From: Oculina patagonica | Taxonomy: Eukaryota | Assembly (NCBI RefSeq): GCF_052425735.1 | Contig: NC_135759.1 | Location: forward strand, 10,230,001 to 10,294,000 | Direction: 5' to 3' | DNA length: 64,000 nt | Shown: piece after piece, positions 1-13,982 of the stretch | Numbering within the stretch: position 1 is the first letter of the stretch | How the letters are laid out: every line of letters starts with the position of its first letter | Program-made: the position numbers and the translations under genes | Notes under the pieces: model-generated | The model's input: the letters and a program-made list of their open reading frames with translations, nothing else | Databases searched by the model: none | Told to the model about the DNA's origin: nothing

Positions 1-266
1 TTCATTTTCCATGGATTTTGTCCCCATTTTTTTAATCAATTACTCATAAATAACCTCACTATCTCTCGAACTCGGTTGCCTCGAGCTCCCATTATGTTCA
101 ACAGTTGGCAATTTCCCTAATCTGATTTTTTTCCAAATTTAGCCCCCGGTAACTCAAACTGTGATAGTTAACCGAACCCGTACTAGAGACTACGCAAACT
201 TCCCACGAATATATTTAGAACATTTTAATAACATGGTTTTTATGGGTTTTTTATTCTTTATTGCAG

Positions 267-286
267 CTGCTGGGAAAGATCTAAAG
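267..286 (+). CDS. 20-nt micro-exon of the transcobalamin-beta/DUF4430-like gene (x-A-G-K-D-L-K)
   Basis: Strong acceptor ttttttattctttattgcag| at 266 and donor aag|gtaaat at 287. Phase 1 in and phase 0 out, so it joins in frame to the exon at 6056. Confidence 0.7.
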
Positions 287-487
287 GTAAATAGTCTAGG
301 CCACGAACTATTTAATCACATTTGGGATCTACACATTGTAAACTTCCGGACCCTCCCTTTTTCAGAAGAATCTTACCTTAGAGCGAGAAAATATTAAACA
401 GCCTGTAGCGCAATACCATACAATTCATTCAGTCTATTTTGGAAAATTTGCAAATTTGAAAATGCCAGTAGATTGATTAGTTACTTA

Positions 488-658
488 CAGCAAGGCGCCC
501 AAAAGAGTGACCACTTGTAATTTATTCACATTCTTTCGTGCTGATTTAATCCAATCAAAAGCCGTGGATAGCTCTTGCAGTTGACTTCTGATTGGATTAA
601 ATCTGCACGAAAGAATGTGAATAATTTAAAAGTGGTCACTTTTTTGGGCGCCTTGCTG
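488..658. mobile_element. Palindromic MITE with TA target duplication (Tc1/mariner-type signature)
   Basis: cagcaaggcgcccaaaa...ttttgggcgccttgctg, self-complementary over most of its length; TA at 486-487 and 659-660. Confidence 0.85.
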
Positions 659-1407
659 TAAGAGCAATTCTTTCATTTAGTCAAGCAAAATGGGAAAAGA
701 AAATTTTTGACCCCACTCAAACTTTGCATGCAGTTAGATATTCAGGGGGGTGTACAAAAATAGCCTTCTTTAAGGTTGTAAACCTTTTTGTTGTCATGGC
801 AACAGCCACTGTTTGTTGGAGACTCCAAATCTGATTTTTTGCTTAGAAAATGCTACGAAATGTGCAAAATTTGAAGTGTTGATCCTAAAGCCCATTAAAA
901 CACTAGTGCTCAAGACTTGTAAGAAATAAAGAACCATCATTCTAGTTAACATTGATGTATAGGACGTTTAATTAAATTAAATTTTTAGCGACTTAATAGT
1001 CAATCAAGTAGGTACGTTTTCGGCCATTTGAGTTGATTGGTAAAACTTGCTAGACGTTTCCTTCAATTTTTCCAAAAGTACACCAGTCCCAGACCAGAGA
1101 CTAGACAGGCAGTTTACATGGATGTCATAGTTTTTAAAACTGTAAAGATCTCTGCGGGGCGGATTATCTTATTCAAAAGAAAAGTTAGTGAAAGAGCCGC
1201 ACAAAAATGGGTATTTGTGTATTTCGGCGATACCAACAGTCTGTCTATTCGCCAACAAAGTTTCTTTCAACACTAAATACGCTATCAGACCAAAAGAATA
1301 ATATATCTGTTGTGACACTGCTTGATCAAAAAGAGTCGTATTTGGCCTCTTTTTTTAAGCAATATTATCAAAGTAAGCTTACCTCGAACACCTTTTCTAG
1401 TGCGCCA

Positions 1408-1450
1408 CTTGTTGTTGTTGTTGTTGTTGTTGTTGTTATTGTTGTTGTTA
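1408..1450. repeat. (GTT)n microsatellite in the left arm of the palindrome
   Basis: About 13 GTT units with one interruption; the mirror site in the right arm (~5003-5017) has only about 4 AAC units. Confidence 0.9.
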
Positions 1451-4407
1451 TGATGGAGAAGGTTCATTCCTCGAGCATTTATATTCATCACAAATTCAGG
1501 TGCCAGTAGCTTTGCTGAACTGGCTGTCTCTACACCATCACTGATTGTAAACCAGCTAATTTCAGTATATTCACACAAACCAGACAAACGATAGCAGGCT
1601 CAGCAACTTCTCTAAGATACACTCGAGTCAGCGAGCCACGATAAGCAACCGTCCGGTTTCCGCCATAATTTTCGCTGTTTTTTCCGATAAGTTGACATCA
1701 CTCGCTCTCGAAGAAGGCAAATGCTCTTAAACCACTGGTTCACCGAAGAATCGCCAATACTTAAGGTGTTATACCCATCAATTACTCCGAATATGAAGTC
1801 AGATTGTCAGATGGTGAGAGATCGTGAGATCGTACAGAGTATTATTGGTCAGCGGTTTTGACTGAAAATGATAACTATATTATAATTTCCAAAACAATGT
1901 GTCCTATGGCTTTCTCCTGTACAAAGGTTTTCAATGACCGTACTGGATCCTTTTCATGCCTTCTTCAGAGTACTTATATTTTAAGGAAGTTTGGAAATTA
2001 ACAATTTCACACCTTGCACGAGAAATAATGTGTTTTATATCTCAGTAGAACCATTCTTGTGTTAAACCCTTTTGGCCAGAAAGGGAGGGGACATATAGCG
2101 GTGAACTACTGATTCTTTTACTTTCTCAGAAATTTATCTTTGGAAAAAAAAAAACCGTTTTGTACATGACTTGAAGTTTTCGTGGTAACTATATTTTGAT
2201 TGACATTGTTGGCCAAATTTTCTTTTTCGCTTTCCAAGATCACTTTGACATTTATTTAATAATGGATTTTGATGAGCTTTCGGGAATTCAAATCTTCTGA
2301 CCAAAGCCGACTTGAAGAATTTTGACGCAAATGTGACCGTCTTGTCAGGCCACTGTTAAATACGAACCGCTTAAAATCAAGCATTTTTGTAAACACTGTC
2401 AAGTTTCATTACCATAGTGTTCTTACATTTTGATATAACAAATGCAAACACTTTATACTTTCCATGGTGAGGTAAGCAGATAAGTCAAGAGCAATTTTGG
2501 CTTGCATTACAGTCTTCAAGTGGGAGCTTTGCAGTTGCAGCTGTTAACCTGAGAGAAATGACACATTTTGCATAAGGCTCATTTCGTCTTCCTTCACTTC
2601 TGCGACTTCACATTCCGACTCTGAAAGCTGATTTCGTTTTGCCGCAAAGCGAGAAAAGTAAGATGTAATAATTTGCTGAGGGGTTAAGAATTCCTCCAAA
2701 GAAAACAGCCTCTGATTGTTTGTATCTCTAACTTTTCTCATTTCTTTTGCTATACGGCTACTTTCTTTCCTGAATTCTCCCCTTGTAAAAACTTGCCTTC
2801 AAGAAAAATTTTCTACTTTTCGCTAAATCTGACTGGCTTTGATTTAAGAAGCATTGTGGGCTAGAAAAGAGAAATTTGAGTTTACTTCGCATTTTTTTTT
2901 CAATGTTTATCATGACTACAAACCAGAATACGTCTTTGTCCGATTATGTTGTTTTTTGACGGCTTTTATTTCGATTTTATTGGCGGTTGTTGTCCGGAGT
3001 ATTTCTTCATCATTCGCCGAGTCAGTTTAAACACGTTTTGTTTTAATTTTTGCGCCAGAAAACTACATTGCTTTCTAGATAGTAAAGTTTTAATGAAAAT
3101 GTTGGACATTCTTTGCTTTTTAGAGAAATCTCAACTATCGCTCATCTGAATTCAAAGCTGTGAAATGAAATGGTTCCAATTCTGGCGTCTCGCAAAAGTA
3201 GCGATAGCGGGGCCGTACGCTTTTCTAGTGGGGCCGTACGGCTTTTTCCGGCCCTGCTAGAGGGAGGCGTACGGCCCTCATACGGGACTTTTTTTCATAT
3301 GGTTTTCCAAGGAAATTGCGCGCGAGTCCGTACGGGTCATATGATAATTTGGCTTTCTGCTAAACGCTGCGCGTACCTCAACTTTGCCCTGTCTTGCAGG
3401 GTAACTTTTTCCAATGCCATTACATGAGCCCCATATTCACAGTGTTTCTCCATGGCAGAGTAACGCACAAACCACTTTCTGTACCCTTCTTCAGGGCAGA
3501 AGAATTAAAATCTTCTGAGTAAAAACCTCAGCCGGGCGAAAAGCAGACAACTTTTCTTGAAGGCAAGTTTTTACAAGGGGAGAATTCCGGAAAGAAAGTA
3601 TCTGGAGAAGCCGTAGCAAAAGACTTCTTAACCCCTCAGCAAATTATTACATCTTACATTTCTCGCTTTGCGGCAAAACGAAATCAGCTTTCAGAGTCGG
3701 AATGTGAAGTCGCAGAAGTTGAGCGTGCCTTACAAGACGCTAGACAAGAAATCATTACTTCTCTAGAGAAAGCTTGTCATCATGCATCCCGTTGTTCAGA
3801 GAGACCTGCGATTATGCGAGATGTCAGACGATCAATTGTCTTCGCTATACGCTTAGCAACGCTGAAAGCGATCTGAAAGGAGTTTGACTTGAAAGCTTCA
3901 GGAAGACGAAATGAGCCTTATGCAAAATGTGTCATTTCTCTCAGGTTAACAGCTGCAACTGCAAAGCTTCTGCCTACCTCACCATGGAAAGTATAAAGTG
4001 TTTGCATTTGTTATATCAAAATGTAAGAACACTATGGTAATAAACTTGACAGTGTTTACAAAAATGCTTGATTTTAAGCGGTTCGTATTTAACAGTGGCC
4101 TGACAAGACGGTCACATTAGCGTCAAAATTCTTCAAGTCGGCTTTGGTCAGAAGATTTGAATTCCCGAAAGCTCATCAAAATCCATGAATAAATAAATGT
4201 CAAAGTGATCTTGGAAAGCGAAAAAGAAAATTTGGCCAACAATGTCAATCAAAATATAGTTACCACGAAAACTTCAAGTCATGTACAAAACCGTTTTTTT
4301 TCCAAAGATAAATTTCTGAGAAAGTAAAAGAATCAGTTGTTCACCGCTATATGTCCCCTCCCTTTCTGGCCAAGAGGGTTTTTAAATCCTTTTGGTTTAA
4401 AAAGAGA

Positions 4408-4462
4408 AGAATGGTTCTACAAGAATGGTTCTACAAGAATGGTTCTACAAGAATGGTTCTAC
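4408..4462. repeat. 14-bp tandem repeat (aagaatggttctac) x ~4
   Basis: Seen directly; a single copy at the mirror position ~2045-2058. Confidence 0.9.
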
Positions 4463-6055
4463 TGAGATATAAAACACATTATTTCTCTTGCAAGGTGTGA
4501 AATTGTTAATTTCCAAACTTCCTTAAAATATAAGTACTCTGAAGAAGGCATAGAATTAAACATTTTCAATGAAAAGGATCTAGAACGGTCATTGTAAACC
4601 TTTGTACAGGAGAAAGCCATAGGACACATTGTTTTGGAAATTATAATATAGTTATCATTTTCAGTCAAAACCGCTGACCAATAATACTCTGTACGATCTC
4701 GCGATCTCTCACCATCTGACAATCTGACTTTCATATTCGGAGAAATTGATTGGTATAACACCTTAAGTATTGGCGATTCTTTCGGTGAACCAGTGGTTTA
4801 TAGCGGAAACCGGACGGTTGCTAATCGTGGCTCGCTGTAAGTTATCTTAGAGACGTTGCTGAGCCTGCTATCGTTTGTGTGAATATACTGAAATTAGCTG
4901 GTTTACAATCAGTGATGGTGTAGAGATAGCCAGTTCAGCAAAGCTACTGGCACCTGAATTTGTGATGAATATAAATGCTCGAGGAATGAACCTTTTCCAT
5001 CATAACAACAACAACAAGTGGCGCACTAGAAAAGGTGTTCGAGGTAAGCTTACTTTGATAATATTGCTTAAAAAAAGAGGCCAAATACGACTCTTTTTGA
5101 TCAAGCAGTGTCACAACAGATATTATTCTTTTGGTCTGATAGCGTTTTTAGTGTTGAAAGAAACTTTGTTGGCGAATAGACAGACTGTTACACAAATACC
5201 CATTTTTGAGGCTCGTTCGCTAACCGTTCTTGTGAATAAATTAATTCCCCCCGCAGAGATCGTTACAGTTTTAAAAACTAAGACATTCATGTAAACTGCC
5301 TGTCTATTCTCTTGTCTGGGACTTGTGTACTTTTGGAAACATTGGAGGAAACGTCTAGCAAGTTTTACCAATCAACTCAAATGGCCGAAAACGTACCTAC
5401 TTAATTGACTATTAAGTCGCTAAAAATTTAATTTAATTAAACGTCCTATACATCAATGTTAACTAGAATGATGGTTCTTTATTTCTTACAAGTCTTGAGC
5501 ACTAGTGTTTTAATGGGCTTTAGGATCAACACTTCAAATTTTGCACATTTCGTAGCATTTTCTAAGCAAAAAATCAGATTTGGAGTCTCCAACAAACAGT
5601 GGCTGTTGCCATGACAACAAAAATGTTGCAACCTTAAAGAAAGCCATTTTTGTACATCCCCCCTGAATATCTAACTGCATGCAAAGTTTGAGTGGGGGTC
5701 AAAAATTTAAATTTCCCACTATGCTTGACTCAATTAAAGAATTGCTCTTAAAAAGGATATGAATGTGGTTTTTGCTACATCAGAACAAAAAAATCTCATG
5801 CCTATATTGAGAATGAGTTTGATGAGTTTGTTCCTTCCTAGACTAGTTTTGTTTTTATTTTTTTGCGGGGGGGGGGGGAGGGGTGGGGGAAGCGGGCTTT
5901 TTAAGTCTATTTGCACTAAGACTTAAACGCATTCTCGAGCAACGATTTTTCGGACAATCAAAGCTGTACTTGGGTGTTGATGTCCGCATTTTTAATCTCT
6001 GGAAGTAAAGTCGATATAAATAACCTTTATGATGTCCTTTGCTGTCGTTCTTTAG

Positions 6056-6394
6056 ATCCGCGTCTGTGTTGAGCTTGTGTTCAATGCAACAAAGTACACC
6101 AGCGGCCGGAGTCCTCCTTTGCCTGCATGTGTCAAGGTACGCAATGGTACTAATGCACACGACATCTTGAAAATGGCCGCCACACAAGACTCCTGCTTCA
6201 ACTTCACCGCAGTCATGACGATGTGGGGACACAGCGTGTATTCCATTTGCGGGCTTGATCGAAGACCTGCTGACAAGGTCTACTGGATGATTTACATCGA
6301 CGGCAAATCGGCGCGCACTGGAATTGATTATCTGAGGCCTGGTGACGGATCCACTTTGGTGTTTGTCTACAAGCAGCTGTTTTGGCGAAAATGA
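6056..6394 (+). CDS. Terminal exon of a small protein with a transcobalamin/intrinsic-factor C-terminal beta domain (DUF4430-like), putative cobalamin binder
   Basis: Acceptor gctgtcgttctttag|ATC. Translation IRVCVELVFNA...WGHSVYSICGL...YWMIYIDGKSARTGIDYLRPGDGSTLVFVY...* matches the G-x-V-x-SI-x-G...YW...G...GI...P-x-DG...F-x-Y pattern of this domain. AATAAA at 6650-6655. Confidence 0.8.
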   Translation: MRVCVELVFNATKYTSGRSPPLPACVKVRNGTNAHDILKMAATQDSCFNFTAVMTMWGHSVYSICGLDRRPADKVYWMIYIDGKSARTGIDYLRPGDGSTLVFVYKQLFWRK

Positions 6395-7051
6395 AAGCTG
6401 CATTTAGTAGCTTCAGTTTTTTGATGGTTTTCATCAAAACTGTTCGGTTGCTTGAAAGCGACAGGAAGCACAGGACAAAAATAGAAAGAAATGTTTTGTC
6501 CATGTTATAGCGTTTTCGTCTTTTTTATAACCGAGATATTGTGAAAATAGTTTTGTAAAAACTACACAATGTAGAATGCTGCCGCCATATTGTGAATATT
6601 AGTGTCCTTCTTTGGGTCGCTAATTTGGTGGCCATAATATTGGACAGGAAATAAAGTAGATACTACTATCGATAGAATTCGGTTTCACTTCGTAGCCTAA
6701 AGCTAAATAGTACCCCTGTCACATTCCTACAGTAAAAAGTCCATCTTTTTTATGTTACCCTAGGCTGCGTGCAACCGTTTCATATTTCCTCACGCAGGCA
6801 AGGAACGTCTTCGAAATTAAACGAAACGGCGTCGCTAATCGTGTTCCAGCATCTCCTGAATGTGCATTTGATTTACCGAGGCAGTCTTAAGCAAACACTC
6901 AGAGCGCGCGCATGTATCCCCAATGTTTTCAAGTTTTGTCACACGGGAAGCATTGCTTCCAGCGTCAATTTTTGTTTCCAAGAAGCAAAATTGGCTTCTG
7001 CTACACATGGAAACATGGTAAATCGAGGAAACATTTATAGAACCCCGTTTT

Positions 7052-7457
7052 GGGGGCACTGTCACACGGATTTTAATGCTTTTTGGTAAAAAATACTAAA
7101 ATTGGCAAATAGGTCTTCTCGTACATGAAAGGCACCTAGTACATCAAGATGAAAATATACAATAAATTGTTGTTGAAGGAAGAAGGGAGCCATTTTTATT
7201 TTATGTGTTTTTCCAGTCCACAAGGACAAAACTTGAAAAAATCAGCCTGATATTTTCAAGTTGAGATCTAAAGTTTCTGATGGCAACACAATAACATTGT
7301 TTGTCAGTTCAGTACACTTGTATGGTAATTTTTAACACTTGTATGGTAATTTTTAACACTTGTATGGTAATTTTTAACAAAATTGGACCACTATTTGTAG
7401 TTTCCATATGTCTTTATGCTCTTGAGGTTTTGAAGTGAAACTGGTGACAGTGTCCCT
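7052..7457. mobile_element. TTAA-type (Kolobok-like) MITE, left end damaged, with an internal 21-bp x3 tandem repeat (7314-7376)
   Basis: TIR ggggcactgtcac / gtgacagtgtccct followed by TTAA (7458-7461). Confidence 0.65.
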
Positions 7458-7697
7458 TTAAACATAACATTTTTATTGTCAAGCAGCTATTTCTTCCAAA
7501 CTCCGTCGTTTACAATTATTTTTGCCATAATACATTGTTAAATTGGATAATCTGCGGCTTAGATCGTCGTTGCAGCTTGTTGACTAGGCCAGCTTCTTGT
7601 AGACAATGCAGTTGCTGAAATTATAAGGAATATTATTCCACTTGTCATTGATAGGAAAATTGGATACGTTATCAGCGATCTTCCTCCACTTGGCTTA

Positions 7698-7848
7698 TTG
7701 CTGGCTTGCAACTGACGTCACGGCGGCCATGTTGGGGGATAGGAACAAAGCGTTTCCCTCCACTGGGAAATGTTCATGCAAATGTTGCGAAAATTTATTT
7801 TATTGTTTTGACCCCCAACATGGCCGCTTTGTGGTTGCAAGCCAGCAA
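7698..7848. mobile_element. Short palindromic MITE with TA TSD, inserted in the lectin exon
   Basis: ttgctggcttgcaac...ggcggccatgttgg / ccaacatggccgc...gttgcaagccagcaa; TA at 7696-7697 and 7849-7850. Confidence 0.85.
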
Positions 7849-7895
7849 TAGGCGGCATTGTCATTCGGTTCACCAGGACCCCAATACGTATAGAC

Positions 7896-8210
7896 AGCAG
7901 GAGGGATTGCGGGGGGCCCGGAAGAGCGGAGGGAAAAAAATGGCGCGGAAGATAAACTGTGACTGAGCGAAAAAGAGATTCAAAAAAGTGGTGGGGGGCA
8001 AGAGAGGCGGGAGGAAAAGGAAAAAGTGGAAGGAGCCCACACGAGGATAAACAAAGGAGGAGAGGACGGACAGGGACGAGCAGACCAGCGGAGAGGGAGG
8101 AGCGAAGAAGGCAAAGGAGGGGAAGGGAAGAGAGCGAGGACGAGGGGCAGAGGGGGGGGGGGAGAAGACACGGAGGCACGAGAGCGCCGACGGCGCAAAG
8201 CCCTCCTGCT
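7896..8210. mobile_element. Purine-rich MITE with 9-bp TSD (Mutator-like signature), inserted in the lectin exon
   Basis: TIR agcaggagggattgcg / cgcaaagccctcctgct; perfect TSD cgtatagac at 7887-7895 and 8211-8219. Confidence 0.85.
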
Positions 8211-8644
8211 CGTATAGACTGGAACCGAGTTATCACACCAGAACCAGTCCGCTGCGCTTGAATCCCAGGTCATGAAGCTTGCTGTCTCACGAGACTCAGG
8301 ACAAACTCGTTTTCTTCAAAAAAGAAAATTAAAAACCCAATTGAGATCGACAAGTTTTGCCGAACCATCGAAGTATGAAATTGTATGCCAATAGTTTGAC
8401 GACGCCGCAGGAAACAAATGAATCGCGGTTGAACTTTTAGGTTAATGCTCACAGATTTGAGCAACTATCCAAATCGGAATAAAAGTTAGTTTTTTCATTG
8501 ACTTTCAATTTACCATTTTTCTGTTTATTTAATCTGTTTAACAGTGCTTCGTGGCTACGGAAACTTTATCGTGAAATCATAACAACTTAGCTCACGGGTA
8601 GCAGCATTGCTCACACTAAGTGTACTGAATTCTTGTGTTATTTT

Positions 8645-8815
8645 ATAGAACAAATAGATTCCATTTTGCCGTGGATCTGTTCAGTTATAGATCACAGAAG
8701 ACGTCAAAATGTGGTATGAACATCAGTGACTCACTAGCCTAGCGGTTCGTGGGCCACTTTTCTGTTCATACCACATTTTGACGTCATCTGTGATCATCTG
8801 TGATCTATGAAACAG
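8645..8815. mobile_element. Palindromic MITE-like repeat
   Basis: Inverted arms atagatcacagaagacgtcaaaatgtggtatgaac / gttcataccacattttgacgtcatctgtgatc. Confidence 0.7.
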
Positions 8816-9067
8816 AAGACAACAAACTTTCGAAGAACTCACGATAAGATGAATTTGAAAATCTGCTTGTCAATAAAATTGGAGGCAAGAAATTTGTTCA
8901 ATTAATTTTACAATTTTCCTAGTAGTGCTTTATTCTAACCAGTTAATGTTTAATTGTATGCATATATCTTTGGAGGAAAGTTCTTCTGAACAATTACATA
9001 AGTAAGCGGCCGATATTTTCTTATTTCCTAAATTGTCAAGTCCACGTTTGGGTTGTGCGAAACTCCT

Positions 9068-9258
9068 GAGCCCCTCCCAGTGGTTTCAGGGAACAAGGGA
9101 ACATGCATGGACATAAAATAATTGGGAACAAGGGAACAAAATCTCTGTTTCTGATATTTTAGGGAACAGGGATCACAAAAATTGACAAAACTTAAGGGAA
9201 CAAAGGAACACAAGGAAAGTTTTTGGGGAGCAGGGATCCCCCACCCTGGGATGGCCTC
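9068..9258. mobile_element. Small TIR element with internal gggaacaa repeats
   Basis: Termini gagcccctcccag / ctgggatggcctc; flanking direct repeat actcct at 9062-9067 and 9259-9264. Confidence 0.7.
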
Positions 9259-9760
9259 ACTCCTCTCCGTCAATGTCTGTGGGTGTGGCTTTGATCGACA
9301 TTATTACAACTAATTTAAGTGATTAGTTGACCAGTCCACTTCAGTTTTTTTTCGTTTTTTGTTCCCTTAGCATATTTAAAGTAATTTTGTATGAGAGAAG
9401 GTTTAAACCTTCAAACACTGAGGAGCATTCGCCATCTTTTTCCGGTGTCTTACAGAATCCTTTGCAGTAATACCACTTTAATTGTAAAATGAAAGGGATA
9501 ACCACAGACGTTTCCATTGATGACTGATTATTTTTGGCCTTTTGGCAAAATCAACATATCGTCTTTCGTCTGCCTCGGGTGGGAAATAGCCGTGGAAACG
9601 AAATCCCATGGGCAAATTCTCGTGTAAAAGTGCGAAAGAAATTTCTCGTAAGTATAACGGCGTTTTGCGTTTGCACTTACTGGATCTCACTTCAAAGAGA
9701 GAAACTGCGCCCCAGGATATGCCTCTGTTTGGTAGATAACCAGTGACTTGCATATTTCAG

Positions 9761-12700
9761 GTGCTTGAAGCGGTAACTCCACAGACCCACGTGATCTTTT
9801 TGTGCTCCCCGAACAACCCAACAGGGAATACCCTGGCCACAGATAGCATCATTGCACTTCTTGAACGATTCCATGGAATAGTGGTTGTTGACGAAGCCTA
9901 CGTTGACTTCAGTAGTTCAGCCAGTCTATGTTACCTTCTGGACAGATATCCACGATTGATAATTCTACAGACTTTCTCAAAAGCATTTGGCCTGGCTGGA
10001 GTAAGGTAGGATTATTTTCCGATTGCACAAACAGTATATACTATTTTGTCTGCAAGTTGACGTCTACAAATTTAGCACTGGCGCATACGATGGCTTTTTT
10101 ATTATTTTTTTTTTTGGTTACTACTTTCCTTGAGGTGCAGTTTAAAAGGAATAATTATAAACAAAAAATGCTTATTCATTCTGTTTCAGATTCGGATTTC
10201 CGTAATCTCTTACTAATGGTGCTTCTGCTGGAAAAATTGGATGTAATATAGCCAACACTCAATAATTGCTTAAATTGGAAATTCACTGCTACGATCATTT
10301 ATCACTTTCATATACATCCGCAGTTCATATATGAATCATTTCATATACATTACATCATTCACTCCTCTCTCGGGAAAATATGAACTCACACTTGACCTCG
10401 CTCCCAATGTGTGGCTTCAATAGCTCAGTTGGTAGAGCATCGCACCGGTATCGCGGAGGTCACGGGTTCGTATCCCGTTGAAGCCCTGAATTTTTTTCAG
10501 GCTTCTTTTTCTAATTGATTAAATTGGAAATTCACTGCTACGATCATTTATCACTTTTATATACATCCGCAGTTCATATATGAATCATTTCATATACATT
10601 ACATCACTCTCTCAAGTGTTATGTATCTTTTCAATCGAAACTAAAACTACGGAGAAAACGGAGAAATAAAATCGTAAAAATCTACGATAATTAAGATCAG
10701 TTTTCCAAATAATCGTCACGGTTTTCATTTCCTTTGTTTTAACTTGATGAATTATTGACAAGTTTGAAAATAAGAATTATAAAATTGAAGGCGACGTTCA
10801 CTCAGTAGTGTCAGTAGTCAGGTCCTTTTGTTCCCATGACCCGCGTTTTTTACTAATATTAACATTTTGATGGGAACTGATTACATGCTGATCCTTCGTC
10901 AACGAAGTCCTCATCTGCATATGAGCACAGCCTAAAGAAACAGATGTCTTTTATTGGGCACTCATTCAATTCTTCGCAGGAGAGGCAAGGGAAAAATTCC
11001 ACTAAGTTCTCATGACGTTGAAGTGCCTCTGCTTGTCATACGGTTTCGCTTTTTCTGCGTGCACACAACAATTTCAGACGCCTCTTTCGCAAAATGTTCT
11101 CTCAGGCTAGTCAACACACAAATTCTCTTCTGTTGTCTTAATAATTTCTTATAGTATTAATAAGGAGAATTTGATCAAATATTACATTGTTTTTCCTGCA
11201 GGTTTGGAATGGCGATTGCTCACGAAGATATTATAGCAATATTCAACAAGGTGAAGTTTCCTTACAACGTCAGCAAGCTAACAGCAGCTGTCGCTCACAA
11301 GGCGCTGGATAATGTACACCTCATGGAGGCTAACGTGAAGTGCATTGTTGAACAGAAACAAAGAATTGTCGAGGAACTGAAGAAACTTCCAACAGTGAGA
11401 AAGGTAATGATATTCTGATTTATAAATCCTTATACTACCTAAAGTTAAGAAAAAAAATATAAATTTCATTCTACACAATATTTGAACCACCATATGACAG
11501 TATCGCACAAGAACTTTCATTTAAATAGTTACACATCAAGGTCTCAACCAGAGACGTAGAATTAGAAGTCTAAATTAGAACCACCTTGGACAGCGTAATA
11601 AAAAAGTAACTCATGAATCGAAAGCACTGCTCAATAACTTTCATTTGAATGTTCACACACTCGGGTTTTATCCACAGACTTAAAAGAAGGAGCCACATTG
11701 TACAGCATAATAAACAGTAACTCATAAATGTACAGCTCAAAAGCTTTAATTTGAATGGACACACACTAAGGTTTCTTCCGCAGACTGGAAAGTTATAACC
11801 ACCCTGTACACTGGCGTAATAAACACCACATGAAAGTACTGCTCGATAGTTTTTGTTCTAACGGGAACCTACAAGGGTTTCATCCACTGACTTCAAAGAA
11901 AATTAACTTCTGGGATACAAACAAAATGAGCACAGTTTAATTTACAAATATTTCAAATGTTTGTCCTTGTGTAAAGCGCTTAGCAAAAAAATTGCATTCA
12001 AATTTCGACGGATTTTGTTCTTGTTTCTGGAAATGTTTGTGTTCTTAGGCAAGACACGTTACTCACTCACCGTGCTTCTCTCCACCTCCAGGGCCTGTTC
12101 ATGGGGCAGAATGCATGTACATCATTAAATATTCATTATCAGCGAAGCGGCAAATTTGAATGCTAGAGCGCTCACAATAAGAGAAGAAAGCGTCAAAATT
12201 GGCCCAGTAGCGTTGATTAAACTTGGTTTTCTGGCTTCAAGAAGTAAAAATCTACCAACAAAACAAAAAGAAAGAAAGAATAGGCGCTGAGTTCATTGTT
12301 TAGTTTACCGCCCTTGCATGATCAAATTGATCAAATGAGTATTGTCGCGCATTCATAGCAACCAATGAAAACAGCTATTTCTTAGCGTCTATGAATATTA
12401 ACAAGCGTCATGACAGACCTATACACTTTCTTCAACAGTAAGTAAATGTCCCGAGAACAATAGGCATTCTACGCTATGTGTTGAAAGCACGACTAAACCA
12501 GCCCAGGATTAGCATGAATTTTTATTTCAATTGTGTAACTTTTCAGTGAGGTTTTTCCCTTTTAAATTTTTGTCCTTAAGTTTTGAATTTGACGATTGTC
12601 AAACTTCACAAAGCATAACTTTGACCTGTAAACAGTTTTTATACAAGAAAGCTTTGATTTAGTATTAATCCTGGATTAGCACTGATCAGCTTTCGAACAA

Positions 12701-13164
12701 CCTGAACAAGACAAGTTTTAATGGGTACAGCGAACTGTTGCGGGAACCAAAAAAAAAATGCAGAGCGTAGACTTACCTTGCGATTATCTTCATCCTATCT
12801 AGAGGGTGAAACAAACTTCCTTGACACTTCGTGCAAAATTTAACAGTGTAAAGCACTAGGAACAGTGAGCCATATTAAGCAGCAGATTTTAAATTCAGAT
12901 TTGTTAAATTATTTGGTTCTTCTGTTATCTTAGATTTTCCCGTCTGACAGCAACTACATTCTAGTAAGGATAGACCACGCCCAAGAAATCTACAAGAAAA
13001 TGGCTTCAGAGAAAGGAGTTGTGATTCGTTACCAAGGAGGAAAAATCCGCTGTGAAGATTGTGTCCGAATAACCGTTGGTACACCGGAACAAAATGATAT
13101 TCTCTTAAAAACCCTCAAGAATACTATAGATGAAGTCAGACAGACAAGCAATGGCTCTGTTTAG
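9761..13164 (+). CDS. HIS5: Histidinol-phosphate aminotransferase (HisC/His5, PLP-dependent class I/II aminotransferase), C-terminal 225 aa; exons 9761-10005, 11202-11403, 12934-13164
   Basis: Motifs FLCSPNNPTGN, VVVDEAYVDF, LQTFSKAFGLAGVRFG (PLP lysine), PYNVS, PSDSNYILV and CVRITVGTPEQN. Canonical GT-AG introns with consistent phases (2, 0) and no internal stops. N-terminal exons not found. Confidence 0.9.
10263..10606 (+). mobile_element. tRNA-derived repeat: tRNA-like core (10413-10486) flanked by ~95-bp direct repeats (10263-10357, 10512-10606)
   Basis: Core ggcttcaatagctcagttggtagagc...ggttcgtatcccgttgaagcc has A/B boxes and a GGT anticodon in an imperfect stem. The two flanks are near-identical, period 249 bp. 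Confidence 0.75.
11490..11895. repeat. Degenerate ~110-125-bp tandem repeat (ctttcatttgaatg..cacac...agac...aaccacc.tgtacagc.taataaa), ~4 copies, in a HIS5 intron
   Basis: Motif recurs at ~11513, 11637, 11744 and 11850. Confidence 0.6.
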
Positions 13165-13661
13165 AGCATTCTGACGGCGGCCATATTTGGTGTCCAATAT
13201 GGCCGCCATGACGTCATATGACACTTTTGAACCTTACGTTGGGTAGAATTCCTTTCTCGCGTAAAATTTATTTAAATGCGTGCTAATACGGCTCTTTTAT
13301 TTAAGATGGTTTAAAATTGTCTCTGCAGTAGACCGAAGATGTCTGTAAACTGATACAAAATAGCTACGAGCAGTATCAATGCGATTTAGCATATTTTTTG
13401 TTGGTAATGGTGAAATTCTGTCAGCATTTACAAGCTAAAAGCAAGACTTACGTGGTATAAAAAAATGTAATGGTGTTATGCTTGTAGATTATTATATTTA
13501 GACTAACGGTTTAATTTATGAAAATGTAAAAAAAAAAGCTCAAGATAGAGGTAAAAGTAATTTTATTTATACGCGCAGGAGCCCATCAACTGGAGCCTTC
13601 ATCTCCCATACTAACCCTTGGAGTCAACCCTTTCCCGTATTAATTTATTTTTGTGTGGACT

Positions 13662-13982
13662 TTAAAGTCTACACATTGTTGTCATGCAGTTTTTTCCGAT
13701 TGGGGGGTCACTTTCCGTGATAACTCGGGTTAGTTCTTTCGGAAGTTTTCGACAGTGATCGGAGAATCCGAAGTTTCGGTGAGATGGGCAGCCAAGGCAG
13801 TAAACCCAGAAATTCGATCAGTGTCGAGTAAGTCGCACTTTATTCTTGAATCTAGAAGCCTTTTTGACACAGCTTTCGAAGAACGTGTGGTGGCTGGAAA
13901 ATATACATCAAGGAACAACTTCAAAGGCAGCGGTGGCGTAGATGAAAAGTGAAATAACAATCACGACGGCTGAAATCTTCAT
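13662..13982 (-). other. 106-codon secreted Cys-rich ORF with two in-frame TGA codons (pseudogene or recoded gene)
   Basis: MKISAVVIVISLFIYATAA-FEVVP*CIFSSHHTFFESCVKKASRFKNKVRLTRH*SNFWVYCLGCPSHRNFGFSDHCRKLPKELTRVITESDPPIGKNCMTTMCRL-TAA. Classic signal peptide, 7 Cys, no frameshift; AATAAA on the minus strand at 13644-13649 and 13562-13567. Confidence 0.6.

What the first reader, a model, noticed from the sequence alone, without database searches (positions are those of the whole stretch)
9761..13164. Spliced histidine-biosynthesis gene in an animal genome
Seen: HisC/His5 motifs split by spliceosomal introns that contain host-type repeats, which argues against bacterial contamination. Known: histidine is essential for nearly all animals, and a fungal-like de novo pathway has been reported in robust-clade stony corals. 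If the host lies outside that clade, this extends the known distribution or records a pathway relic.
Basis: partly seen in the sequence, partly recalled or inferred. Interest (0 to 1): 0.7.

Follow-up and report, generated by a model that had tools for sequence, protein, structure and literature searches.

The report
Coral histidinol-phosphate aminotransferase gene, last exons
The stretch holds the last three exons of an intact, expressed histidine-biosynthesis gene (HisC/HIS5) of the stony coral Oculina patagonica, which belongs to the robust-coral clade where this pathway was described in 2018, so the gene is real but expected.

Summary
Window 9761-13164 (+) holds exons 4-6 of a six-exon HisC gene, with GT..AG introns. 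Exons 1-3 lie 28.6-31.4 kb upstream, outside the window.

The spliced product is identical to the 364-aa NCBI protein 'histidinol-phosphate aminotransferase-like [Oculina patagonica]'. It scores 363.7 bits on the hisC equivalog TIGR01141 (cut-off 276.55) and keeps the PLP lysine and the substrate-binding residues. It is the only HisC-grade hit in the genome. Spliced transcript contigs occur in four runs from four studies. dN/dS against a related coral is 0.13.

Exon-level hits for the other six pathway genes (HIS1, 4, 6, 7, 3, 2) are in the same genome. HIS1 is supported only weakly.

Oculina is a robust coral (Vacatina), so the find falls inside the distribution reported by Ying et al. 2018. 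It does not extend that distribution and it is not a relic.

Two additions:
- The gene clusters with sponge, Syssomonas and Capsaspora HisC, and four of its five introns sit at positions shared with them. This argues for vertical holozoan descent.
- Intron 3 (28,568 bp) hosts three cobalamin-binding-protein gene copies.

The scan also noted HIS1 elsewhere in this genome (s1-294127).

The parts
1..9760 (+). 3' part of intron 3 of the HisC gene. The whole intron is 28,568 bp, from C2:10211193 to window 9760, phase 0, GT..AG.
   Evidence: An exact spliced mapping of P0161 onto C2:10200001-10294000 places exon 3 at C2:10211118-10211192 and exon 4 at window 9761. The acceptor reads ..tttcag|GTG. 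A transcript contig of a related coral joins exon 3 directly to exon 4.
9761..10005 (+). Exon 4 (245 nt; residues 140-220 plus two bases of the Arg221 codon). It carries SPNNPTG (Asn158), DEAY (Asp183, Tyr186) and TFSKAFGLAG with the PLP lysine Lys213.
   Evidence: TIGR01141 positions 137-217, 104.8 bits. Exact mapping. Alignment to E. coli HisC 1FG3. Covered by spliced contigs in 4 runs.
10006..11201 (+). Intron 4 (1,196 bp, GT..AG, phase 2, splits the Arg221 codon).
   Evidence: The joint 10003>11200 (cut +2), GT..AG, is seen in one contig in each of 4 runs from 4 studies. The same position and phase occur in the Sycon, Corticium and Capsaspora genes.
10263..10613 (.). Satellite-type host repeat inside intron 4: two 102-nt direct repeats 249 bp apart, flanking a tRNA-Thr(GGU)-like module at 10413-10486.
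   Evidence: ARAGORN. Direct repeats at 96% identity. At least 178 genomic copies at 90-97% identity, often in roughly 251-bp tandem arrays on many contigs.
11202..11403 (+). Exon 5 (202 nt; last base of Arg221 through Lys288).
   Evidence: TIGR01141 positions 220-284, 49.7 bits. Exact mapping. Spliced contigs.
11404..12933 (+). Intron 5 (1,530 bp, GT..AG, phase 0).
   Evidence: The joint 11401>12932 (cut +2), GT..AG, is seen in 4 runs. The position is shared with Sycon and Corticium.
12934..13164 (+). Exon 6 coding part (residues 289-364 plus stop TAG 13162-13164). It carries Arg320 and Arg333, which align with the substrate-phosphate arginines of E. coli HisC.
   Evidence: TIGR01141 positions 285-348, 55.1 bits. 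Exact mapping. Alignment to 1FG3.
13165..13652 (+). 3' untranslated region, as far as the transcript contigs run (they end at 13562 or 13652).
   Evidence: Contig pieces X1 record 1 (to 13562) and X4 record 15 (to 13652) continue from exon 6 without a break (table 8).

Best explanation
Window 9761-13164 is the 3' part (exons 4-6 of 6) of the single-copy nuclear gene for histidinol-phosphate aminotransferase (HisC, yeast HIS5, KEGG K00817) of the robust stony coral Oculina patagonica.

The 364-residue product is a fold-type I, PLP-dependent aminotransferase. By homology, it moves the amino group of glutamate onto imidazole-acetol phosphate to give L-histidinol phosphate. This is step 7 of de novo histidine synthesis. 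The cofactor is held on Lys213.

The gene is transcribed and spliced, evolves under purifying selection, and sits in a genome that also carries loci matching the other six pathway genes. It is an old holozoan gene inherited vertically and kept in robust corals (and in at least two sponges), not a recent bacterial acquisition.

Shown: gene structure, family membership by score, conserved residues, spliced transcripts, species, and co-occurrence of the pathway loci. Inferred: enzyme activity and a working pathway.
For: Structure and identity:
- The exact six-exon model, with all introns GT..AG, translates to P0161 'histidinol-phosphate aminotransferase-like [Oculina patagonica]'. The contig length on record for P0161, 46,518,285, equals that of the window's contig C2.

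Family membership:
- P0161 scores 363.7 bits on the TIGR01141 hisC equivalog (cut-off 276.55) over profile positions 1-348. The next different function, CobD, scores 188 bits.
- The best solved relatives are HisC 7SZP and E. coli 1FG3, at 231 and 229 bits.
- Y22, Y55, N158, D183, Y186, T210, S212, K213, R221, R320 and R333 align with E. coli Y20, Y55, N157, D184, Y187, T211, S213, K214, R222, R322 and R335. The roles of those E. coli residues come from my knowledge of the 1FG3/1GEW structures.
- This is the only HisC-grade locus in the genome. The other hits are generic class-I aminotransferases scoring at most 88 bits on hisC.

Expression and selection:
- Intron-free joints 10005>11202 and 11403>12934 occur in 4 runs from 4 studies. 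Exon depth is 30-136, against about 0-3 in the non-repeat parts of the introns.
- A 2.2-kb contig of a related coral aligns to the region as spliced exons 1-6.
- dN/dS is 0.13 over 364 codons.

Rest of the pathway in the same genome:
- HIS4.
- Intronless IGPD, identical to an annotated O. patagonica protein.
- Fused GATase-cyclase HIS7.
- hisA_euk HIS6.
- PHP-type HIS2.
- HisG plus HisG_C exons for HIS1.

Host clade:
- Oculinidae, suborder Vacatina.

Descent:
- Corals plus sponges form a clade at 96/85, Syssomonas (Colp12) joins at 92/87 and Capsaspora at 80/82.
- Oculina introns 1, 3, 4 and 5 share position and phase with the Sycon, Corticium or Capsaspora genes.

Prior report: Ying et al. 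2018, PMC6214176.
Against: - No enzyme activity or histidine labelling has been measured for this or any coral HisC. Ying et al. themselves say they could not show the pathway to be functional.
- HisC-type enzymes also transaminate aromatic keto acids (preprint 10.1101/2024.03.19.585368), so another physiological role is possible.
- HIS1, the committed step, was detected only as weak single-exon hits: 24.3 bits on HisG, just under the cut-off, and 29.4 bits on HisG_C.
- The runs laid on the window are labelled RNA only by guess, and they are contigs rather than reads.
- The exon 3 to exon 4 junction across the 28.6-kb intron is seen directly only in a related coral's contig. For Oculina it is inferred from a contig with the expected 443 nt upstream of exon 4.
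Confidence: 0.9

Rival explanations
1. The gene is intact and expressed, but its main job in the coral is not histidine synthesis. It would serve as a broad-specificity aminotransferase (for example aromatic amino acids), and the pathway as a whole would not run.
For: HisP aminotransferases of Arabidopsis and E. coli produced five amino acids, preferring Trp, Tyr and Phe, in a multi-substrate assay. Pathway function in corals has never been shown directly. HIS1 was seen only weakly here.
Against: The residues that align with the substrate-phosphate arginines and tyrosines of E. coli HisC are all kept. Loci matching the other six genes co-occur in the genome, among them IGPD and the PRA-CH/histidinol-dehydrogenase gene, which have no known role outside histidine synthesis. 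Complex corals and anemones lost the set together according to PMC6214176, which fits a single shared function.
Confidence: 0.06
2. The locus is a decaying relic: a pseudogene split by a 28.6-kb insertion of other genes and transposons between exons 3 and 4.
For: Intron 3 is unusually long. It holds three cobalamin-binding-protein gene copies and a 5-kb palindrome. The two halves of the gene lie 28.6 kb apart.
Against: The 364-codon frame is open and all splice sites are canonical. dN/dS is 0.13. The catalytic residues are kept. A 1,545-nt spliced contig carries 443 nt upstream of exon 4, the length expected for exons 1-3 plus a short leader. The same exon 3 to exon 4 junction occurs in a related coral's transcript. 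An intron at this very position and phase exists in Sycon and Capsaspora, so it is an old intron that grew, not an insertion into an exon.
Confidence: 0.02
3. The gene entered corals by a fairly recent horizontal transfer from Bacteroidota/Balneolota-like bacteria and then acquired introns. This reading is suggested by the best Swiss-Prot hits to Flavobacterium and Cytophaga in Ying et al.
For: The nearest named bacterial proteins are Balneolales, Rhodohalobacter and Bacteroidetes HisC at 52-55% identity. The whole eukaryotic group sits inside a 100/98 clade with them. The Swiss-Prot best hits in PMC6214176 Table 3 are Flavobacterium johnsoniae and Cytophaga hutchinsonii.
Against: Equally similar proteins (52-56% identity) come from sponges, Capsaspora, Syssomonas (Colp12) and stramenopiles. 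Corals group with sponges and then with unicellular holozoans, in the order of the species tree. Four of the five coral introns coincide in position and phase with introns of those genes. Taking roughly 7 occupied sites among about 1,080 possible ones, my estimate of the chance is about 1e-8. Any bacterial link would therefore date to before the Holozoa.
Confidence: 0.02
4. The sequence is bacterial, dinoflagellate-symbiont or other contamination in the assembly.
For: None was found. Contamination has misled cnidarian studies before (Nematostella, per PMC6214176).
Against: The gene spans 34.8 kb of a 46.5-Mb contig with no N. It has spliceosomal introns, one carrying a satellite found on many contigs of the genome. 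It has animal neighbours: Sec8/EXOC4 head to head, and cobalamin-binding genes nested in intron 3.
Confidence: 0.003

Closest known systems
Histidinol-phosphate aminotransferase (K00817) of robust corals: Goniastrea aspera gasp1.m3.19230, Fungia sp. ffun1.m4.6504 and the Stylophora pistillata gene (Ying et al. 2018, PMC6214176)
   Same: Same enzyme family, same host clade (Robusta/Vacatina), intron-bearing, part of a seven-gene 'fungal-like' histidine pathway, and nearest bacterial similarity to Bacteroidota-type HisC. The partial Stylophora model XP_022804768.1 (P0001) is 86-89% identical and shares the exon 3/4/5 boundaries.
   Different: Only the species differs. O. patagonica was not in that study. 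The Goniastrea and Fungia sequences themselves could not be fetched here, so orthology to them is inferred through Stylophora and through two unnamed coral transcript clusters (P0160, P0279).
Escherichia coli HisC (PDB 1FG3, 1GEW) and the enterobacterial HisC 7SZP
   Same: Full-length alignment at 229-231 bits. The PLP lysine, the Asp/Tyr/Asn that hold the cofactor ring and the two substrate-phosphate arginines all align.
   Different: A bacterial operon gene without introns. The Balneolota/Bacteroidota and holozoan proteins at 52-56% identity are the nearer relatives of the coral protein.
HisC-like genes of the sponges Sycon ciliatum (P0291) and Corticium candelabrum (P0288) and of Capsaspora owczarzaki (P0354)
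   Same: 53-56% identical. They are intron-bearing genes on chromosome-scale records beside eukaryotic genes. They group with the corals in the tree. They share 3-4 intron positions and phases with the Oculina gene.
   Different: More distant hosts. Whether the sponges hold the rest of the pathway was not testable here. Oculina lacks their phase-2 intron in the N-terminal part and has its own phase-0 intron after Lys114.
Saccharomyces cerevisiae HIS5 and plant HISN6 (Medicago, PDB 8BJ1)
   Same: Same reaction and same fold family. The plant enzyme matches at 179 bits.
   Different: No fungal HIS5 sequence could be obtained, so 'fungal-like' was not tested for this enzyme. No fungal protein appears among the 120 best hits of a search of 5.8 billion sequences. 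The 'fungal-like' label therefore fits the pathway's fused architecture (HIS4, HIS7) better than it fits this enzyme.

Membership tests
HisC, histidinol-phosphate transaminase (NCBIfam TIGR01141 equivalog; Pfam PF00155 class I/II aminotransferases) | The full-length protein scores above the curated equivalog cut-off and above every model of another function. | tested here: met
   363.7 bits against a cut-off of 276.55, over profile positions 1-348 of 349. The best model of another function, CobD threonine-phosphate decarboxylase, scores 188.3 bits, below its own cut-off. Each window exon separately has hisC as its best hit.
HisC, histidinol-phosphate transaminase (NCBIfam TIGR01141 equivalog; Pfam PF00155 class I/II aminotransferases) | The PLP Schiff-base lysine in the S-K-x-F-G-L-A-G motif, and the cofactor-holding Asn, Asp, Tyr, Thr, Ser and Arg. 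| tested here: met
   K213, N158, D183, Y186, T210, S212 and R221 align with E. coli K214, N157, D184, Y187, T211, S213 and R222. The roles of the E. coli residues are from my knowledge of the 1FG3/1GEW papers.
HisC, histidinol-phosphate transaminase (NCBIfam TIGR01141 equivalog; Pfam PF00155 class I/II aminotransferases) | Residues that bind the phosphate and imidazole of the substrate (E. coli Tyr20, Tyr55, Arg322, Arg335). | tested here: met
   Y22, Y55, R320 and R333 align. They are also conserved in the sponge, Capsaspora and Balneolales proteins in the alignment.
HisC, histidinol-phosphate transaminase (NCBIfam TIGR01141 equivalog; Pfam PF00155 class I/II aminotransferases) | Catalyses imidazole-acetol phosphate + glutamate <-> histidinol phosphate + 2-oxoglutarate. 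| not testable with these tools
   This needs a recombinant enzyme assay or complementation of a hisC/his5 mutant.
Robust-coral de novo histidine pathway (Ying et al. 2018) | The host belongs to the robust clade of Scleractinia. | tested here: met
   The product is identical to an NCBI Oculina patagonica protein on a contig of the same length as C2. The species sits in Oculinidae, suborder Vacatina; that Vacatina is the robust clade is from my knowledge. The named best IGPD hits are Desmophyllum, Orbicella and Pocillopora.
Robust-coral de novo histidine pathway (Ying et al. 2018) | All seven genes are present: HIS1, HIS4 (trifunctional), HIS6, HIS7 (fused), HIS3, HIS5 and HIS2. | tested here: inconclusive
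   Six are clear at exon level:
- HIS4, as PRA-CH plus Histidinol_dh exons on one strand of C14
- HIS3
- HIS7, as a GATase plus His_biosynth fusion
- HIS6
- HIS2
- HIS5 (this gene)

HIS1 rests on one HisG exon at 24.3 bits (cut-off 25.5), two HisG_C exons (29.4 and 22.4 bits) 3 kb downstream on the same strand, and visible motifs. Full-length models of the other genes were not built.
Robust-coral de novo histidine pathway (Ying et al. 2018) | Nuclear genes with introns, except the intronless IGPD, scattered over the genome. | tested here: met
   HisC has five introns. IGPD is a single 200-codon ORF. The loci lie on C1, C2, C5, C10 and C14.
Robust-coral de novo histidine pathway (Ying et al. 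2018) | The gene is transcribed. | tested here: met
   Spliced contigs with both window introns removed occur in 4 runs from 4 studies. These are contigs from runs whose RNA label is a guess, but the depth pattern is exon-only.

The most novel reading that the evidence does not exclude
The coral gene is one surviving copy of an ancestral holozoan HisC that calcareous and homoscleromorph sponges also keep. If those sponges hold the rest of the pathway too, histidine synthesis was not lost on the animal stem, as comparative studies state. It would instead have been lost several times later, and robust corals would not be unique among animals in being able to make histidine.
Probability: 0.3. Interest if true: 0.55.

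Novelty: already known. Interest (0 to 1): 0.22.

Why it matters
For the finding as given, little changes. It confirms in one more robust coral, from a chromosome-scale assembly, what Ying et al. 2018 predicted to hold across the Robusta, and the gene already carries the right name in the public annotation. O. patagonica is facultatively symbiotic (my knowledge). That would make it a convenient species for the labelling experiment that has never been done: does symbiont-free coral tissue make its own histidine?

The side result has wider reach. The shared intron positions and the tree tie the coral gene to sponge, Syssomonas and Capsaspora genes. This gives independent support for vertical inheritance. 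It also shows that at least this pathway gene outlived the animal stem lineage in two phyla, which conflicts with statements that the histidine genes were lost entirely from animals (PMC6040629).

Tried and rejected
- **Genomic loci of P0161 and the Stylophora model P0001.** The look-up of encoding contigs had neither on record, so the length of intron 3 and its nested genes could not be compared with another coral.
- **Sponges and the rest of the pathway.** The last homologue search, with the intronless IGPD, was filled by 120 coral orthologues at 86% identity or more and said nothing about sponges. Literature searches for a sponge histidine pathway found nothing relevant.
- **HisG searches.** The Pfam and TIGR models gave only one weak exon each. 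HisG_C and reading the frames by eye helped, but no full HIS1 model was built.
- **AU test.** Holding corals together with the named Balneolota was rejected (p 5e-66). The test is uninformative, because the constraint also tore the named bacteria away from their unnamed near-identical kin. I do not use it.
- **First tree.** The quick tree with very long 'far' rows was replaced by a careful tree without them.
- **Fungal HIS5, choanoflagellate and dinoflagellate HisC.**
- **N-terminal extension.** The upstream in-frame Met in exon 1 would add 28 residues. I rejected it as the likely start because the extension is not conserved in the related coral.
- **Other aminotransferase loci.** C1:38.546 Mb and two loci on C13 were considered as alternative HisC candidates and rejected, at 88 bits or less on hisC.
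- **Structure and complex prediction.** Not run; sequence evidence was sufficient.
Full report
**What is in the stretch.** Window 9761-13164 on the + strand holds three open blocks bounded by canonical splice sites:
- Exon 4 at 9761-10005, with the donor GT at 10006.
- Exon 5 at 11202-11403.
- Exon 6 at 12934-13164, ending in TAG.

Each block, translated alone, has the NCBIfam equivalog TIGR01141 (hisC, histidinol-phosphate transaminase) as its best hit. The three hits tile the profile in order at positions 137-217, 220-284 and 285-348 of 349. Pfam places all three on consecutive parts of Aminotran_1_2. The stretch is, however, only the C-terminal 62% of a protein.

**The whole gene.** A profile search of the window's own assembly found the missing N-terminal part on the same strand of the same contig, about 29.5 kb upstream and outside the window. 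The assembly is G000: 529 Mb in 1,951 contigs, with the window at C2:10230001-10294000. I fetched C2:10200001-10230000 (the 94-kb region has no N) and read the upstream exons.

An exact spliced mapping gives six exons:

| Exon | Place |
|---|---|
| 1 | C2:10208380-10208473 |
| 2 | C2:10210250-10210497 |
| 3 | C2:10211118-10211192 |
| 4 | window 9761-10005 |
| 5 | window 11202-11403 |
| 6 | window 12934-13164 |

All five introns are GT..AG, with phases 1, 0, 0, 2, 0. Intron 3 is 28,568 bp, and the gene spans 34.8 kb.

**Species and annotation.** The spliced translation is identical to P0161, a 364-residue NCBI protein named 'histidinol-phosphate aminotransferase-like [Oculina patagonica]'. The contig length on record for P0161, 46,518,285, is exactly that of C2. 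The intronless IGPD gene of the same assembly is likewise identical to an O. patagonica protein.

NCBI taxonomy puts O. patagonica in Scleractinia, suborder Vacatina, family Oculinidae. Vacatina is the formal name of the robust clade (my knowledge). The named best IGPD hits are Desmophyllum, Orbicella and Pocillopora, all robust corals.

**Is it a HisC?** The full protein scores 363.7 bits on TIGR01141, against a cut-off of 276.55, over the whole profile. The best model of a different function, CobD, reaches 188 bits. The closest solved structures are HisC 7SZP and E. coli HisC 1FG3, at 231 and 229 bits.

In that alignment the coral residues match the E. coli residues as follows:

| Coral | E. 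coli | Role (my knowledge of the E. coli structures) |
|---|---|---|
| K213 | K214 | PLP lysine |
| N158, D183, Y186, T210, S212, R221 | N157, D184, Y187, T211, S213, R222 | cofactor contacts |
| Y22, Y55, R320, R333 | Y20, Y55, R322, R335 | substrate contacts |

The Arg221 codon is the one split by intron 4. The other aminotransferase-like loci in the genome are generic class-I enzymes with at most 88 bits on hisC. This is therefore the only HisC in the assembly.

**Is it alive?** I laid contigs of four runs from four studies on window 9400-13900. Each has one contig that jumps 10005>11202 and 11403>12934 at the predicted GT..AG borders. Depth is on exons and near zero in the non-repeat parts of the introns. 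The RNA label of these runs is a guess, but the exon-only pattern is what cDNA gives.

One 1,545-nt contig has 443 nt upstream of exon 4. That is the length expected for exons 1-3 (417 nt) plus a short leader. Transcripts run to 13562 or 13652, which gives a 3' UTR of about 400-490 nt.

A 2.2-kb Logan contig from a related coral (P0279, 88% identical protein) aligns to the Oculina region as spliced exons 1-6. It also carries the spliced exons of the upstream, head-to-head gene, which is Sec8/EXOC4. dN/dS between the two corals is 0.13 over 364 codons. The gene is intact, expressed and under purifying selection. It is not a relic.

**Is it the host's?** Yes, on several counts:
- It lies on a 46.5-Mb contig and has animal neighbours.
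- The repeat in intron 4 (10263-10613) is 1.4 units of a roughly 250-bp satellite with a tRNA-Thr(GGU)-like module. It occurs at least 178 times at 90-97% identity, often in tandem arrays, on many large contigs of the genome.
- Intron 3 carries three copies of a eukaryotic cobalamin-binding-protein gene and a 5-kb palindrome.

**The rest of the pathway.** Profile searches of the same genome found the following:
- HIS4: PRA-CH and six Histidinol_dh exons in a row on C14.
- HIS3: an intronless 200-codon IGPD on C1.
- HIS7: a fused glutamine amidotransferase-cyclase on C1.
- HIS6: four hisA_euk exons on C10.
- HIS2: a PHP-type histidinol phosphatase on C5.
- HIS1: a HisG exon plus HisG_C exons on one strand of C14.

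The HIS1 evidence is weak on score. I checked that only partly.

**Comparison with what is known.** Ying et al. 2018 (PMC6214176) reported a complete 'fungal-like' histidine pathway in the robust corals Goniastrea, Fungia and Stylophora. [quoted passage not shown] All its genes have introns except IGPD. The K00817 proteins have their best Swiss-Prot hits in Flavobacterium and Cytophaga. The authors argued that the pathway is ancestral rather than laterally acquired, and probably present throughout the Robusta.

The Oculina gene matches this description on every point tested.

**Origin of the gene (added here).** A search with the full-length protein found two more coral clusters (88% and 86% identity). 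After these comes a plateau at 52-56% identity that mixes two groups:
- Balneolota and Bacteroidota HisC.
- Eukaryotic proteins: the sponges Sycon ciliatum and Corticium candelabrum, Capsaspora owczarzaki, an EukProt entry 'Colp12' and several stramenopiles. To my knowledge Colp12 is the holozoan Syssomonas multiformis.

In a careful maximum-likelihood tree of 64 proteins:
- The corals are one clade (100/100).
- Corals plus sponges are a starred clade (96/85).
- Colp12 joins next (92/87), then Capsaspora (80/82).
- All 17 eukaryote rows lie on one side of a weakly supported branch (58/85).
- That branch sits within a 100/98 clade shared with Balneolota-type bacteria.

The sponge and Capsaspora genes are intron-bearing genes on large records beside eukaryotic genes. 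I mapped their introns on a protein alignment. Oculina introns 1, 3, 4 and 5 coincide in column and phase with introns of Sycon, Corticium or Capsaspora. Intron 4 is shared by all four species. Intron 3, the 28.6-kb one, is shared with Sycon and Capsaspora. Only Oculina intron 2 is private.

With roughly 1,080 possible sites and seven occupied ones, four of five coincidences by chance would be of the order of 1e-8 (my estimate). This supports vertical descent from a holozoan ancestor and argues against a recent bacterial transfer into corals.

It also shows that at least two sponges keep an orthologue. Comparative studies have stated that the histidine genes were lost entirely from animals (PMC6040629), and a 2026 paper places the losses at the root of animals (PMC12923814, abstract). 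Whether the sponges have the whole pathway could not be tested here.

**Verdict.** The thing itself is already known: an annotated HisC gene of a robust coral, a member of the pathway published in 2018. Enzyme activity and a working pathway remain inferred for every coral. Interest is low for the finding as posed. The sponge link and the intron evidence are modest additions worth a follow-up.

Noticed in passing
window 1-9760 with L011:4039-7543 (-), L012:1639-5116 (-), L012:8091-8930 (+) and window 6077-6394 (+): Intron 3 of the HisC gene (28,568 bp) hosts three copies of a two-part eukaryotic cobalamin-binding-protein gene (Pfam Cobalamin_bind plus DUF4430, transcobalamin/intrinsic-factor-like). 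Two copies are antisense and one is sense to HisC. The first copy has its N-terminal domain split into two ORFs and may be broken.
   Followed up: partly
window 700-5708: There is a 5-kb palindrome with arms 92-98% complementary. It lies between the Cobalamin_bind exon (L012:8091-8930) and the DUF4430 exon (window 6077-6394) of the sense-strand nested gene.
   Followed up: partly
window 10263-10613; for example G000:C12:10628558-10632671 and C9:4932868-4936863: The intron-4 repeat is a satellite of about 251-bp period that contains a tRNA-Thr(GGU)-like module. It has at least 178 copies at 90-97% identity, many in long tandem arrays. Depth in the transcript-like contigs is very high, in the hundreds to thousands.
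   Followed up: partly
L033:6001-13663 (Sycon ciliatum OZ025892.1) and L034:6001-10212 (Corticium candelabrum OY729833.1): Two sponges have intron-bearing HisC-like genes 53-56% identical to the coral protein. The genes group with the corals and share 3-4 intron positions with the Oculina gene. Published comparisons state that the histidine genes were lost from all animals, or that only robust corals keep the pathway.
   Followed up: partly
L010:5023-8129 (- strand), 73 bp upstream of the start of the exon-1 match: A Sec8/EXOC4 (exocyst) gene lies head to head with HisC. A single contig of a related coral carries the spliced 5' exons of both genes, so the two transcripts overlap or share a very short bidirectional promoter, and the arrangement is conserved.
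   Followed up: partly
window 7711-7828 and 13176-13216: The motif GGCGGCCAT(A/G)TTGG occurs four times as two inverted pairs, where 0.02 matches are expected. Each pair sits beside a TGACGTCA palindrome. One pair begins 12 bp after the HisC stop codon, and the other lies in intron 3 next to a GA-rich tract. It is unexplained; it could be transposon ends or a regulatory element.
   Followed up: no
proteins P0004, P0006, P0298, P0340, P0341, P0359 (554-596 aa): Metagenomic proteins in the same HisC clade are fused to a C-terminal IGPD domain (HisC-HisB). This joins steps 7 and 6 of the pathway in one chain.
   Followed up: no
G000:C1:38546465-38547334 (L002:1174-2487, -) and G000:C13:37572702-37573367 and 37587209-37587835 (L006, L007): There are intronless ORFs of 411-437 codons for class-I aminotransferases. 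One is aspartate-aminotransferase-like. The other two lie about 14.5 kb apart on C13; the one scanned (L006) is MppQ/PdxR-like. None reaches any NCBIfam cut-off and none is HisC.
   Followed up: partly
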